Shown: piece by piece, positions 37,695-42,278 of the stretch
Position numbering within the stretch: the stretch's first letter is position 1
Layout: every line of letters begins with the position of its first letter
Assembly (NCBI GenBank): GCA_977016875.1
Contig: CDRNST010000035.1
Coordinates: 4,216,001-4,280,000, forward strand
Direction: 5' to 3'
Length of the DNA: 64,000 nt
DNA from: Pavona decussata
Taxonomy: Eukaryota
Notes under the pieces: generated by a model
Told to the model about the DNA's origin: nothing
Databases searched by the model: none
Seen by the model: only the letters and a program-made list of their open reading frames with translations
Made by a program: the position numbers and the translations under genes

Positions 37695-39351
37695 CTTTAG
37701 ACAAAATTAAATGAAAATAAATAACATAATTTTTAAATTATGAGGCTCAGATGCATTGGACAATGATTAAAGATAAAATAATTAATTAGAATTAGCAGTT
37801 AATTCGCAGTCATTGGCTTTTCTCTTGCTGTTAAGGGAAGGAACAGGAGTGGTGTCCCAACACTTGAAATAAAATCATTATTGTAGAGCTGATGACACCA
37901 GAGAGGAAACGCCGGGGAGGGGGGAAATATTCCCATATAAAAATGCCGGGGGTGATTGTTGTACCATTTTAGGGGTTAAACTTCATGGTTTGGTACTCCC
38001 TGGTACTCCAGAGGTGTGGTGGAATGTTTTAAGGTATTGAACCCAAAAATATGATAACTTACAAATGTCAGTCAACTGATTTGGTATTCTTAAGAGTTAA
38101 CATTGTTCAGGCCATTCCCACTAAACAGAATTCTGGTACCTTTAAGGGGTTCTTTTCAAAATTTCCAATGCTCACCCCCATCATTTTTATATGGGAATCC
38201 CCGCCCCCCAGTGGAATGTTCTTATAAGTTTTATGTACTCCGATTAAGAACGTCACTTTTTGTGGTACTTTTTATTTTAAGAGCCATTAAAAAAAGTCAG
38301 TTTTTCTATTTCCCATGAAAATATCTTTTCACTTGGGCAGGAGGTTTTGGAGGGGGGAGGGGAAGGCAAGTGATTTTCCAGTTACCATAGTGGCAAGCTA
38401 GTAAAACTAATAAGCTAATAAAACACAACACAAACAGCATACACCCATCTGTGACTGTAAAGACAATCAAGTCAGAAAATCAAGTAATAGAAAAAGAACT
38501 GAAAAGGATTGGCAAGTCTTCCTAATTAAAGGAAAAATAGACCTCCTTCACAGAGGCTTACACAGAAGTCTGTAACATATTTACTCAGGTAAACAAAGCA
38601 TACAGGGGTGTTTATTCAAGACAAGAATTTAATTAACTGTTATTGCTAGGCATTTATTTAGCCTGCATAACTGGTGAGATGAGGGGTGACCAAGCAGTGA
38701 AGCCTCTTGGCATAAACAGGGCAAGTTTTACTCCATCCCATATTTCTCTCCAGACTAGAGCGGATGAAATCGAAAAGCTCAAGACAGGATTTCACAGGAT
38801 TGGCAAACTAGGTTTGAAAGACTACTTAGTTGAGTCGAGTCCACAACTTCTAGACTGATCTGCAAACAAAGTTTTGTCAATGTTTCGCTTCTGTGCTTTA
38901 ACCTTTCCCACTGCTGGAAGGTTTAAACACATTTTCCTTGGAAATGTATGTCAAAAGACTGATACTTTTCTGAAATATATAACCAACTTTAACCTTACAG
39001 ATGCCATTCAGGCTTTCCCCCTCAGTCTTTCAACCTTTTTTGGCAGGTTTTAACAGTGTATCTCCCCCCATATCAGACTGTAATACAATATTGTCTTCGG
39101 AATTCAAATGTACATGTACACATTTAGATCCATACATCCATCCAAGAAATCTTAAAAGCAACTGGCTTCAGGCACAGGCAACACAGGTTGTTCACGTAAG
39201 CAGCCTGAAATAGTCTGCTGCAAAGCCATCGTTTTTTAGTTACAGCCACTTAAAGGTAAAATTAAGGGTGTTTTAATAGGAGGTTACACGGTTACTACGG
39301 TAACCCATTTATGTGTGGGGAAAATCACCATAAATTGTTCACCAATATTAA

Positions 39352-39806
39352 CCCTTTCCCTACCAAGTTTTTTGACCTATTTTTCGAAAACGGTAAACCA
39401 GCTTGCTGATGTAATATGAATGTAATTCATTTCTGAAATCAAGATAACTGAAGGAAGTCAGGTCTTTGATAGAAATGGTTTTAAAACGAAAAAATTCAAA
39501 ACTACAAAATTTCACTGATCGACTCATGTGGTAGGTATACCTCAAAACTGTAGCTTATTTTGCAGCTTTTGATGCATAGAACACTCTGAGATATGTGAGA
39601 GTCTGTAAATGCATAAAATGAAAATATTCCACAAATCATAGGGGTGGTAAACAACATCATAGATACCAGAGGATACCATTTTTTTGTTTTGAAATGCAAA
39701 GATCTTTCCAAGCCCAATTTGCTGACAAAATTTCACTGTAATTGAGCAAATACTTACCAAGTTATGAGTTCAGGACCCACTATAGTGGGTCTCGGTAGGG
39801 AAAGGG
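39352..39806. mobile_element. piggyBac-like MITE in the G3 intron
   Basis: TTAA|ccctttccctacc ... ggtagggaaaggg|TTAA; absent from the paralogous intron at ~56350. Confidence 0.85.
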
Positions 39807-40061
39807 TTAATGCATCTTTTGGTATCATTGTGGTACTAACTGATAAAGAGTGGTAGTATCGACTGGTCAAAGTGTTAGTGCTGGAAAATAAATGGACATC
39901 GGTGCCAGCCACCTTTAAAAGAATGCAATTCCCTTTTTCTTTTTAACAGTTACTTGAGTAATGTCTCACAAGAGGTTCGTGGATAGATTTCAGAGAAAGG
40001 ATTTATTTCAATCTACCTTTACTTCATCAGCTATCATTGCTTAATAAGCACCTACTGGAAA

Positions 40062-40490
40062 TTTTTTTTTTAACACTACTTTATTGACCATTACACATGT
40101 TACATACAGCAAATTAAACAGCCAGAAAGAAATGAAATATATGTGCAAAGTGATTTAAAGTGATAAGGTCAAAAGGACAGGTGCGAGAGGGACGCGAGGA
40201 CCCATGTGAGGCACCTCCCATGATACAAATAATAATTAAAACACGATCAACCAGAAGACCCCAAATTTAAAAGACGCTAAAAAAACTAGGGATCCCAGGA
40301 GCAGGATCGTACAATTGACCACGTACAGGGATAGAATATGTCAAAGTTATTCTGCAAAAGGTGAAACATGTGCTCAGTAACAAAGTTGCGGAAGGAAACA
40401 GTAGTTGAAAAACTGGTAGGGGGTGAGAATTTACAGATATAGTTCCACAGCTTAACAATATGATTAAAGTAAGAAAACAATTTATTAAAT
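40062..40490 (-). mobile_element. CR1-like LINE 3' end
   Basis: SYFNHIVKLWN...PCTW peptide, aataaa and an A-tail; absent from the G4 copy. Confidence 0.6.
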
Positions 40491-40575
40491 ACTTGATCTT
40501 GTGGACAGCAATTGTTTAATATTGAACCCTTCATTTACTTTGACTCTGGTATCTTATTAAGAAAATATGGCTTAC

Positions 40576-41745
40576 CATGACATTGTTGGGCCATCTCAAA
40601 AAATGTGTCCACCAGGTTGTCACATTGTTTCTTCCAACTGAAATGGTTGGTGTATTCCTTTCTCAGTTCCTCAGCTTGTGAGTGGCGACTTTGTGGGTCC
40701 TTGGATCTGATCTCCTTTATCTTGTCAGCCCAAACTTGTGGATCATCTGACTCCACAACCTGGCTTGCTCCAGTGTGCAGCTTCTTTAAAATGACGCCAA
40801 GGCCACTAAATGAACTGACAAGAACAGGAACATTGGCAGAAATGGCGAGGAGACCACTCATTCCAAAACCTTCAGTTCTTGACGGTTTGATGACCAGGTC
40901 AGCCTCACACAACCACTGACGCCAGTCTGCATGGTTTTTACAAACCCTCACTGTAAGCTGACGGGAATCAATGCCCTCTTTGAGTAAGGCCTGTGTTATG
41001 TCTCTCACACCTGTCTCTGATTCAGAGGGCCTTAAAACAACCATTAACTGATAAGATGATGCGTTCAGCAATTTGATTGCTTGAGCAGCAATGTCGCATC
41101 CCTTGACTTTAAAGTAATATGATGATCCACTGACCAACACATGAAAATTGTCAGCCTCATCATACACTCGACGAACACCATTCAATTCTTCGATAACTCC
41201 TGGTGTAAACTCAATCACATTTTCATGCTTGCTAGTATGCCGTAAATAACGTCTGTAAGCTTGTGCCACCTTAGGGCCAATTGCAATAATGATGTCAGCC
41301 TTTTCACAGAGTGTTACTTGAAGTTGATGATCATCTTTACAATCTTGTGGATGTTCTAAGAATTTATAAAGTTCATCACTGATTGTGTGCACAACCTGAG
41401 CCCACTTGCATTTCTTGAGTTTCTTTATAACTTGTGCTTGTCGACCTAGGCCAGGTCCGTATGAATGTATCAACAGAATGTCAATCTTTAGGTGGTCAGG
41501 TGGGTGACCAAGGAGCTCAGTTGTTGGGTAACCAGAGAGATCCTGATCCGCATCAACAAGTTCAATATTTAAGCTCCTTGCATGGTTTCTCTTTTCCTCT
41601 GAGTGATGGGGCACAAATCCACTGACTTTCAGTCTGGAATCCTTGGCCAGTTCAAGAACTAACAGCGTATTGACAGCATTTTTCCAGTTACCAACATCTG
41701 ATGCTACTGTTATATTTAACTTTCCTTCAGCTGTTGAATTTGAAC
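40576..41745 (-). CDS. G3 exon: GT-B fold, GT4 / Glycos_transf_1-like glycosyltransferase domain
   Basis: tgtcttacag|GT TCA ... TGT CAT G|gtaagc, 1170 nt, phase 1-1. Motifs WAQVVHT, ADIIIAIG, KG.DIAAQA, ADLVIKPSRTEGFGMSGL.AISANVPVLVS, YTNHFSW. Confidence 0.88.
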
Positions 41746-42278
41746 CTGTAAGACAGGATTCATAGGATAATAAATTTGTTTTGATGATTGACGACAATTC
41801 GTAATCTTACAATTACTGAACATTTCATAACCAGAATAAGATGAATGACTATAATAAGGTTTGTAATTGATGCACATGTATACGTTTTTCAATGTTCCAC
41901 TGTTTATATTATTTTATAAATGAAATCCTTTGTTAAGAAGAATACCTCATGCTTCACAAGGACGCTTTAATCCTTTCTTTTTCACCTTTGATTTGGCGTT
42001 ATGCAATAACACGCTATCTTTCTAACTAAAACTATTCAATTAGTTCAATCGAGAGGGAGGATAAGTTTGAAAATCTGGGAGGCATATAATGGGAATATAT
42101 AAGGCTAAACATACACCAGCGCATTCCGCATAAACGCCCATAGGCATCTTGTATACCACCAAGTTATCTGTTACCCTTATGTTGAACTGTGTTGGCCCTG
42201 TCATGACAAAAATGTCCTCTAAAATCTACTAACTGAAGGTGATCCAGTCAAGGTCAAAACTGACTTTGTTATCAAAAG

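What the first reader, a model, noticed from the sequence alone, without database searches (positions are those of the whole stretch)
39115..42100. Exon shuffling caught in the act: a ~3-kb GT4 cassette placed in front of two divergent DD exons
The GT4 exon and its intron flanks are highly similar between G3 and G4 (39115-42100 vs 56095-59320). Similarity ends inside the introns, and the downstream DD exons are much more divergent (roughly half or fewer of residues shared, by eye). A single symmetric phase 1-1 exon was therefore recently copied or gene-converted between older DD genes. Copy-specific TE insertions with visible empty sites post-date the event.
Basis: seen in the sequence. Interest (0 to 1): 0.7.

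Follow-up and report, generated by a model that had tools for sequence, protein, structure and literature searches.

The report
Mosaic coral immune gene from three neighbours

Summary
A block of about 3 kb is shared by two neighbouring minus-strand genes, G3 (39128-42097) and G4 (56129-59319). It holds one 1170-nt phase 1-1 exon encoding a GT4-conflict domain, 95.4% identical in DNA and 90.7% in protein, plus about 0.75 kb of unique intron flank that is 89% identical. Similarity stops abruptly inside the introns. Copy-specific transposon insertions with target-site duplications and empty sites are present.

The interpretation needs changing. G4's death-domain exon is not an older partner. It is a copy of the next gene's (G5) death-domain exon (85% nt), and in G4 it lies behind a premature stop and carries its own frameshift. 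G4's 5' exons copy G2's. The three patches have the same non-coding divergence (K 0.11, 0.12, 0.14). They tile essentially the whole transcription unit, with short filler and transposon fragments at the two junctions.

A second haplotype carries both G3 and G4. A related assembly has G5 running straight into G3, with no G4. So G4 is most likely a lineage-specific gene assembled in one episode from three neighbours, all junctions lying in phase-1 introns. It is as old as the split from that relative, so it is not very recent.

The scan had already noted G4's chimeric 5' end on this window (s1-497996). The family and its variable architectures are published.

The parts
39128..42097 (-). G3 copy of the shared GT4 block (exon plus intron flanks)
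40576..41745 (-). G3 GT4-conflict exon, 1170 nt, phase 1-1
   Evidence: RNA-type contigs of run X5 carry G3's letters across it.
45828..45849 (-). Coding end of G3 exon 1 (ATG plus 7 codons plus 1 base, phase-1 donor G|GTGAGT)
   Evidence: The loose end of an X5 contig at the GT4 acceptor matches 45830-45855 exactly.
37213..37694 (-). G3 death-domain exon, phase-1 acceptor AAAG|AT, ending in a stop
   Evidence: Pfam Death hits the same ORF in the other haplotype.
56129..59319 (-). G4 copy of the shared GT4 block (the G3-like patch)
57436..58605 (-). G4 GT4-conflict exon, open, 36 aa changes from G3
59604..59747 (-). G4 short Pro/Thr-rich linker exon, 144 nt, phase 1-1, homologous to the start and end of G2's long repeat exon
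59729..64000 (-). G2-like patch of G4. It runs on beyond the window to about 65784, and the trypsin-like first coding exon lies at 64942-65865 in extended window coordinates.
51296..55673 (-). G5-like patch of G4: part of an intron, the DD exon and 3.4 kb of 3' flank. It duplicates extended coordinates 70334-74698.
54759..55204 (-). G4 terminal exon. The acceptor is conserved (intron ends at 55205), an in-frame TGA lies at 55068-55070, and the G5-type DD (54759-55051) is out of frame with a further 1-bp deletion near 54839.
   Evidence: A contig of run X1 covers 54810-55183 with no gaps.
39352..39806 (.). piggyBac-like MITE found only in this haplotype's G3 (TTAA duplication, inverted repeats CCCTTTCCCTACC)
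40065..40476 (.). G3-specific insertion, present in both haplotypes and absent from G4 and from the related assembly
56674..57377 (.). G4-specific 704-bp high-copy insertion
   Evidence: (joint 56673>57378)
58766..59121 (.). G4-specific MITE with an 8-bp target-site duplication ATTATTTT
55758..55981 (.). Dispersed-repeat fragment lying in the junction between the G5-like and G3-like patches
59235..59493 (.). Two dispersed-repeat fragments at the junction between the G3-like and G2-like patches. The first also ends the G3 side at 42014-42095.

Best explanation
G3 is an ordinary member of the coral GT4-conflict/Death family. It has a 7-codon first exon, one GT4 exon and one death-domain exon, giving about 557 aa.

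G4 is a lineage-specific mosaic gene made by segmental copying within the tandem cluster. Its trypsin-like exon, intron and linker exon copy G2. Its GT4 exon with about 0.75 kb of intron flank copies G3. Its last exon with 3.4 kb of downstream DNA copies G5. All junctions lie in introns and every exon boundary is phase 1, so the reading frame carried through.

The three patches are equally old, which fits one complex duplication or template-switching episode, or a quick series. The time was about that of the split from a sister lineage that still has G5 running directly into G3.

Afterwards transposons entered both copies. G4's death domain was lost to a premature stop and a frameshift. Both GT4 exons stayed open while collecting mainly amino-acid changes.

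Shown: the anatomy, the ages, the second haplotype, the empty site in the relative, and the G3 exon 1 to GT4 splice. Inferred: a single event, its mechanism, and whether G4 is still used.
For: - Three-way tiling of G4.
- DD tree: G4psi groups with G5 at 100% support and 85% nt, against 57% to G3.
- Equal non-coding divergence: K 0.111+-0.017 (G5), 0.122+-0.027 (G3), 0.137+-0.018 (G2).
- Exon trees place G4 with its local donor and the related assembly outside: GT4 ((G3,G4) 90%), trypsin-like ((G2,G4) 84%).
- The related assembly ERZ26692669 runs G5, then its flank, then G3's upstream sequence with no G4. It has only two G3-type GT4 ORFs and one trypsin-like ORF on that contig.
- The alternative haplotype has the identical mosaic, including both DD-disabling deletions.
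- All boundaries are phase 1.
- The exon has 0 indels, against 5 events in 745 bp of flank. That gives 3-8 expected in the exon (P 0.0004-0.05).
Against: Two related assemblies carry a gene of the same layout in a different place, between G3 and G2: trypsin-like exon, linker, G3-type GT4, G3-type DD. The short linker exon of one of them matches G4's better than G2's. So this layout may predate G4, and G4 may copy such a gene rather than G2 and G3 separately.

The relative's lack of G4 could also be a clean deletion between the two 4.4-kb direct repeats. Junction sequences are overlaid by transposon fragments, so no microhomology can be read.

Synonymous divergence in the exon (0.047) is lower than flank divergence (0.12). 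That allows a later small conversion tract, but the count is only about 12 sites.
Confidence: 0.6

Rival explanations
1. G4 is an old resident gene with a trypsin-like, linker, GT4, DD layout. It was overwritten in three places by interlocus gene conversion from G2, G3 and G5. The related assembly lost it by recombination between the flanking 4.4-kb repeats.
For: The same layout exists in two related assemblies. The linker exon is shared with one of them. Within each genome the two G3-type GT4 copies cluster together: 95.4% here and 98.5% in the relative. That is the usual signature of concerted evolution.
Against: Three independent conversions would have to share one age. Together they would have to cover nearly the whole gene, leaving no older resident sequence. 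The relatives' gene sits at a different position with different flanks. The relative's single flank copy is closer to G5's copy along its whole length, with no hybrid pattern.
Confidence: 0.22
2. One reading: only the 3-kb GT4 cassette was recently copied or converted from one older DD gene into another.
For: Homology between G3 and G4 is limited to the cassette, and the two DD exons share 45% aa.
Against: The cassette's flanks are no younger than G4's other two patches. G4's DD and 5' exons are themselves copies of neighbours. The whole G4 locus is missing in the relative.
Confidence: 0.1
3. A transposon captured and carried the GT4 exon (transduction or a Pack-type element).
For: Dispersed-repeat fragments lie at both borders of the cassette in G4.
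Against: The border fragments belong to different repeat families found at unrelated genomic places. No shared terminal repeats or target-site duplication bracket the cassette. The cassette in the relatives has other borders.
Confidence: 0.04
4. The block is an artefact: collapsed or mis-joined haplotypes. Alternatively it is an old whole-gene duplicate in which only the exon stayed similar through selection.
For: None beyond the a priori possibility.
Against: Both copies lie on one contig of a second haplotype at 97-99% identity. Non-coding flanks are 85-92% identical and then stop abruptly. dN/dS between the exons is about 1 or more, so purifying selection does not explain the similarity.
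Confidence: 0.02

Closest known systems
Lineage-specific expansion of GT4 glycosyltransferase domains with variable architectures in corals (Kaur, Iyer, Burroughs & Aravind 2021, eLife 10:e70394, PMC8195603; Pfam PF20706 GT4-conflict)
   Same: The domain family is the same (E 3e-54). The expansion is huge: at least 106 single-exon copies in this 602-Mb genome. Fusion to death-fold and other immune-type modules is shared. Annotated GT4-Death proteins of 550-600 aa exist in Montipora, Oculina and Orbicella.
   Different: The paper catalogues architectures. In the passages I read, it does not describe the gene structure (one symmetric phase 1-1 exon) or a dated case of one gene assembled from three neighbours.
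Classical exon shuffling of symmetric phase 1-1 modules, and chimeric gene birth by segmental duplication (textbook; cited from my own knowledge)
   Same: The module is one symmetric 1-1 exon. The introns receiving it are phase 1. Breakpoints are intronic. The donor genes remain intact next door.
   Different: Three donors contribute rather than one, with a 4.4-kb duplication of the target flank. The newly joined death domain has already decayed. Relatives carry a similar layout at another position, so the donor may have been a pre-existing chimera.
Interlocus gene conversion and concerted evolution in tandem immune gene arrays (general knowledge)
   Same: Paralogues within a genome are more alike than orthologues. 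The tracts are bounded.
   Different: The equal age of all patches and the absence of the locus in a relative fit one birth event better than repeated conversion.

Membership tests
GT4-conflict glycosyltransferase domain (PF20706) | Profile match above Pfam's gathering score over the full domain | tested here: met
   G3 scores 184.9 bits and G4 170.8 bits against a cut-off of 26, covering profile positions 15-385 and 40-385.
GT4-conflict glycosyltransferase domain (PF20706) | Catalytic competence (retaining GT-B fold, acidic E-x7-E type motif) | not tested
   I only read it by eye. The TEGFG motif is kept. The residue where many GT4 enzymes have the second Glu reads LLAIS. No fold or activity test was run, and another finding of the scan addresses this.
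Death domain (PF00531) | Profile match, with an intact six-helix domain in frame with the rest of the protein | tested here: met
   This row is for G3. Pfam Death hits the 163-aa ORF in the other haplotype. The exon has a phase-1 acceptor in frame with GT4 and aligns to the DD of full-length GT4-Death proteins.
Death domain (PF00531) | The same feature, for G4 | tested here: not met
   The first 73 residues still hit Pfam Death at 27.4 bits. However, the domain lies behind an in-frame TGA, in another frame, and has an internal 1-bp deletion, in both haplotypes.
Exon shuffling (insertion of a symmetric module into an intron of the same phase) | Module is one exon with the same phase at both ends, and the neighbouring exon boundaries have that phase | tested here: met
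   The GT4 exon is 1-1, the linker exon is 1-1, and the terminal exons have phase-1 acceptors. G3 exon 1 and the trypsin-like exon have phase-1 donors.
Exon shuffling (insertion of a symmetric module into an intron of the same phase) | Homology with the donor is limited to the exon plus parts of its flanking introns | tested here: met
Exon shuffling (insertion of a symmetric module into an intron of the same phase) | The recipient gene existed before without the module | tested here: not met
   No older resident part of G4 was found. All three patches have the same age, and the whole locus is absent in a relative.
Interlocus gene conversion | Paralogues cluster by genome rather than by orthology | tested here: met
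   GT4 tree: (G3,G4) 90% and the relative's pair 99%, with a third assembly as outgroup.
Interlocus gene conversion | A pre-existing homologous target whose flanks are older than the tract | tested here: inconclusive
   The flanks of the tract in G4 are same-age copies of other genes. Relatives do have a similar gene type, but elsewhere.

The most novel reading that the evidence does not exclude
The single GT4 exon, and likewise the DD, linker and trypsin-like exons, act as freely exchangeable phase-1 cassettes. One replication-type template-switching event stitched pieces of three neighbouring genes into a new gene. The same trypsin-like, linker, GT4 layout was assembled or re-assembled independently in sister corals. 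On this reading, recurrent local cassette exchange is the engine behind the hundreds of GT4 architectures in corals.
Probability: 0.25. Interest if true: 0.6.

Novelty: new member of a known kind. Interest (0 to 1): 0.42.

Why it matters
Coral genomes hold hundreds of GT4 and death-fold genes in many domain combinations. How these combinations arise has been inferred from protein catalogues. This locus gives a dated, anatomically complete case with these features:
- donors and product lie side by side;
- junctions are in phase-1 introns;
- a relative shows the empty site;
- a second haplotype carries the same arrangement;
- one of the later insertions is still polymorphic;
- one of the joined domains has already been lost.

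The locus can be followed in populations and sister species. That would show how fast such immune-type genes are born and discarded.

Tried and rejected
- **RNA and DNA runs laid on G4.** These are short Logan contigs that merge G3 and G4 paths. They confirmed the DD indels and the G3 exon 1 to GT4 splice. They showed exon-only cover in X5. They could not show whether G4's GT4 exon is transcribed. The letters seen in RNA-type contigs are G3's, and G4's linker exon had no cover in X5 or X19.
- **A recent conversion tract inside the exon.** The longest identical run is 140 nt, P 0.046, which is marginal.
- **A single tandem duplication spanning G5's DD to G3's GT4.** It fails because homology upstream of the cassette ends at 51296/70334.
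- **A tandem duplication as the origin of the relative's chimera.** That contig has only one trypsin-like ORF.
- **Filler at the G5/G3-like junction.** It matches neither donor intron.
- **The wrong-frame translation** was my slip, corrected.
- **Phase-1 donor at the same position in other paralogues.** My crude scan found a G|GTA donor in only 18 of 30 sampled paralogues, so I make no family-wide claim.
- I did not build or search a joined spliced protein; exons were searched singly by reference. Loci from other assemblies span the window's N runs (32447-32580, 36632-36817). I did not read or use those letters.
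Full report
**Setting.** The window is G000:C35:4216001-4280000 of a 602-Mb genome. Its closest named protein relatives are from stony corals: Montipora, Oculina, Orbicella and Acropora. All genes discussed lie on the minus strand. I extended the view by 20 kb on the low side and 40 kb on the high side. Coordinates above 64000 are these extended window coordinates.

Death-domain (DD) exons recur about every 17 kb:
- G0 (about -13000)
- G1 (1339-1761)
- G2 (18204-18617, plus three more DD exons)
- G3 (37213-37694)
- G4 (54759-55051)
- G5 (73751-74370)
- G6 (90911-91420)

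GT4 exons lie upstream of the DD exons of G3, G4, G5 and G6. One more lies on the opposite strand at 82908-84224.

**Check of the observation.** Self-comparison finds the block as 39128-39351 / 39809-40010 / 40512-41915 / 41922-42097 against 56129-56353 / 56353-56555 / 57372-58765 / 59146-59319.
- The exon is 40576-41745 in G3 and 57436-58605 in G4. It is 1170 nt, with acceptor CAG|GT and donor G|GTAAG, both phase 1. Both copies are open.
- Pfam calls both copies GT4-conflict, PF20706, E 3e-54 and 6e-50.
- Exon identity is 95.4% nt and 90.7% aa. The other local GT4 exons are only 49-57% aa identical to either copy.
- Unique intron flanks inside the block total 745 aligned bases with 84 mismatches (K 0.12) and 5 indel events.
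- Outside the block the two genes do not align (55-59% in a forced alignment).
- The DD exons share 45% aa and 56.7% nt.

**Later insertions.** The insertion at 39352-39806 has a TTAA target-site duplication and 13-bp inverted ends. It belongs to a family with hundreds of full-length copies. It is absent from G4, from the other haplotype's G3 and from the related assembly, so it is a young, polymorphic MITE. The insertion at 58766-59121 in G4 has an 8-bp duplication, ATTATTTT. Those at 56674-57377 (G4) and about 40065-40476 (G3) are also copy-specific. The other copy and the relative show the empty sites for all of these.

**Not an assembly artefact.** ENA assembly contig ctg132251 (the same sequence as ctg101405 of a second assembly) is 97-99% identical to the window. 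It carries G4 and G3 in tandem, 16.7 kb apart, so it is the other haplotype. It has the same G4 structure throughout.

**Gene models.**
- G3: an RNA-type contig of run X5 that ends at the GT4 acceptor continues with 26 letters that match 45830-45855 exactly. This gives a first exon ending ATG GAA CAT ACT CCT GCT GTA G|gtgagt, which is phase 1.
- The DD exon of G3 starts at 37694 behind AAAG, also phase 1 and in frame.
- G3 therefore encodes about 557 aa: a short leader, GT4 and DD. Annotated GT4-Death proteins of 551-600 aa from other corals have the same build.
- X5 covers exons but not introns. Across the GT4 exon it carries G3's letters at every diagnostic site listed.

**G4 is a three-part mosaic (the main new result).** A sensitive comparison of whole gene regions shows three patches:
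- 51296-55673 matches G5's 70334-74698. This covers part of the intron, the DD exon and 3.4 kb of 3' flank.
- 56129-59319 matches G3.
- 59729 to about 65784 matches G2's 27563-31657. This covers a trypsin-like first coding exon at 64942-65865, the intron, and the start of the linker exon.

The linker exon of G4 (59604-59747, 144 nt) is itself phase 1-1, and G2's long Pro/Thr-repeat exon has the same phases. The DD tree puts G4's DD with G5's at 100% support, 85% nt. The two junctions are occupied by fragments of dispersed repeats (55758-55981 and 59235-59493).

**G4's death domain is disabled.** The acceptor is conserved (the intron ends at 55205). The frame then runs 44 codons into a TGA at 55068-55070, beside a 14-bp deletion relative to G5. 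The DD lies in another frame and has a 1-bp deletion near 54839. Both haplotypes share these changes. A contig of run X1 covers 54810-55183 without gaps. As assembled, G4 would encode the trypsin-like domain, the linker, GT4 and a 46-residue tail, with no DD.

**Ages.** Non-coding divergence is K 0.111+-0.017 for G4-G5, 0.122+-0.027 for G4-G3 and 0.137+-0.018 for G4-G2. These are indistinguishable. The GT4 exon is more conserved than its flanks, but the same holds between orthologues: G3 against the relative is 95.4% in the exon and 85-92.5% in the flanks. Constraint therefore explains the difference.

**Related assemblies.**
- *ERZ26692669 (sp3), G3 and a chimera.* It has a G3 orthologue. Directly downstream of it lies a gene with a trypsin-like exon, a short linker, a G3-type GT4 and two G3-type DD exons. 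Its two GT4 exons are 98.5% identical to each other and 94.8-95.5% identical to G3 and G4.
- *Trees.* With a third assembly as outgroup, the ML tree is ((G3,G4) 90%, sp3 pair 99%). The trypsin-like exon gives ((G2,G4) 84%, sp3).
- *sp3, the empty site.* After fetching sp3's G5 orthologue, the sequence reads G5 GT4, then its DD, then its flank (with a retroelement inserted), then straight on into the sequence that in the window lies upstream of G3 from 51295 downward. No G4 lies between. That contig has only two G3-type GT4 ORFs and one trypsin-like ORF.
- *What this means.* Relative to sp3, the window carries an extra roughly 19 kb (70333 down to 51296). This is all of G4 plus a second copy of G5's DD and flank.
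- *ERZ26692694 (sp4).* It has a gene with a trypsin-like exon, a Pro/Thr repeat and a G3-type GT4. The intron between the repeat and GT4 is missing, and an internal 355-bp duplication breaks the frame. A G3-type DD follows. A separate G2 orthologue lies 46 kb downstream.

**Reading.**
- The equal age of the three patches, the near-complete tiling of G4 by them, the local sister relationships in three trees and the empty site in sp3 all fit one reading. G4 was born in this lineage, near the time of the split from sp3, by one complex copying episode that joined pieces of three neighbours in introns.
- I cannot tell whether the trypsin-like, linker and GT4 part was copied from G2 and G3 separately. 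It could instead have come from a pre-existing chimera of the sp3/sp4 type, which this genome lacks between G3 and G2.
- G4's linker exon and the adjoining intron resemble sp3's chimera more than G2. G4-G2 homology stops at the start of that exon. Both points favour a pre-existing chimera as source. In that case the new junction at G4's birth was the swap of the DD exon, not the arrival of GT4.
- The main rival is an old G4 patched by three conversions and lost in sp3 between the 4.4-kb repeats. It needs three same-age events and is not supported by any hybrid pattern in sp3's flank. I give it about 0.2.

**After the event.** With the outgroup, the G4 branch has 21 non-synonymous and 2 synonymous changes. 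The G3 branch has 8 and 0, and the sp3 branch 3 and 5. Pairwise dN/dS between G3 and G4 is 1.0-1.5. Some of these are multi-base codon changes, so this is not proof of positive selection. The complete lack of indels and stops in 1170 nt argues that both exons were kept as coding for most of this time: 3-8 indels would be expected from the flanks.

**What is known.** Kaur et al. 2021 (PMC8195603) describe metazoan GT4 domains as probable conflict effectors acquired from bacteria. They report more than 500 paralogues with highly variable architectures in Acropora digitifera. This genome has at least 106 full-length, single-exon GT4 matches. Earlier notes of this scan list GT4 joined to NACHT-LRR, Roco, RING-NYN and TRADD-N modules elsewhere in the genome (not checked by me). 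The family and its variability are therefore known. What this locus adds is the mechanism seen at DNA level in one dated case.

**Limits.**
- The RNA evidence comes from short merged contigs.
- G4's expression is unresolved. Its terminal exon has cover at 97% identity in X5. Its linker exon has none in X5 or X19.
- Species names of the related assemblies are not given to me.
- I did not search a joined spliced model, and I did not read the letters under the window's N runs in other assemblies.

Noticed in passing
window 23829-24423 and 25176-25771: A pair of roughly 600-bp inverted repeats (94.8% identical) brackets G2's first death-domain exon (24774-25109). An exon inside long inverted repeats could reflect a foldback element or favour inversion or back-splicing.
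   Followed up: no
window 26018-27539: G2's large exon is a coding minisatellite with periods of 45 and 90 nt. It encodes VPPVAQPPNTTAGSG-type Pro/Thr repeats. G4 and one related assembly have a collapsed 48-75 aa version.
   Followed up: partly
L046:10700-12400 (related assembly ERZ26692694): The intron between the repeat exon and the GT4 exon is precisely missing, so both are read in one ORF. A 355-bp internal tandem duplication then shifts the GT4 frame.
   Followed up: partly
window 57436-58605 against 40576-41745: After the duplication nearly all fixed changes are amino-acid changes: G4 has 21 against 2 synonymous, G3 has 8 against 0. Several are multi-base changes within one codon.
   Followed up: partly
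window 8273-9079: A perfect-looking tandem duplication of 404 bp, 99.5% identical.
   Followed up: no
window 59235-59635 and 60792-61203: A roughly 410-bp segment holding the 3' end and donor of G4's linker exon is duplicated 1.56 kb upstream (87%). The upstream copy also matches the end of G2's repeat exon.
   Followed up: no
extended coordinates 66064-66851 and 66928-67721 (G000:C35:4282064-4283721): A roughly 790-bp tandem duplication (94%) lies just upstream of G4's trypsin-like exon. The origin of the 4.5 kb between this exon and G5's flank is unknown.
   Followed up: no
L038:11479-12440 against window 39067-40475: The two haplotypes differ by 8-9% in G3's intron downstream of the GT4 exon, against 1-3% elsewhere. 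I found no sign that G4 is the source.
   Followed up: partly
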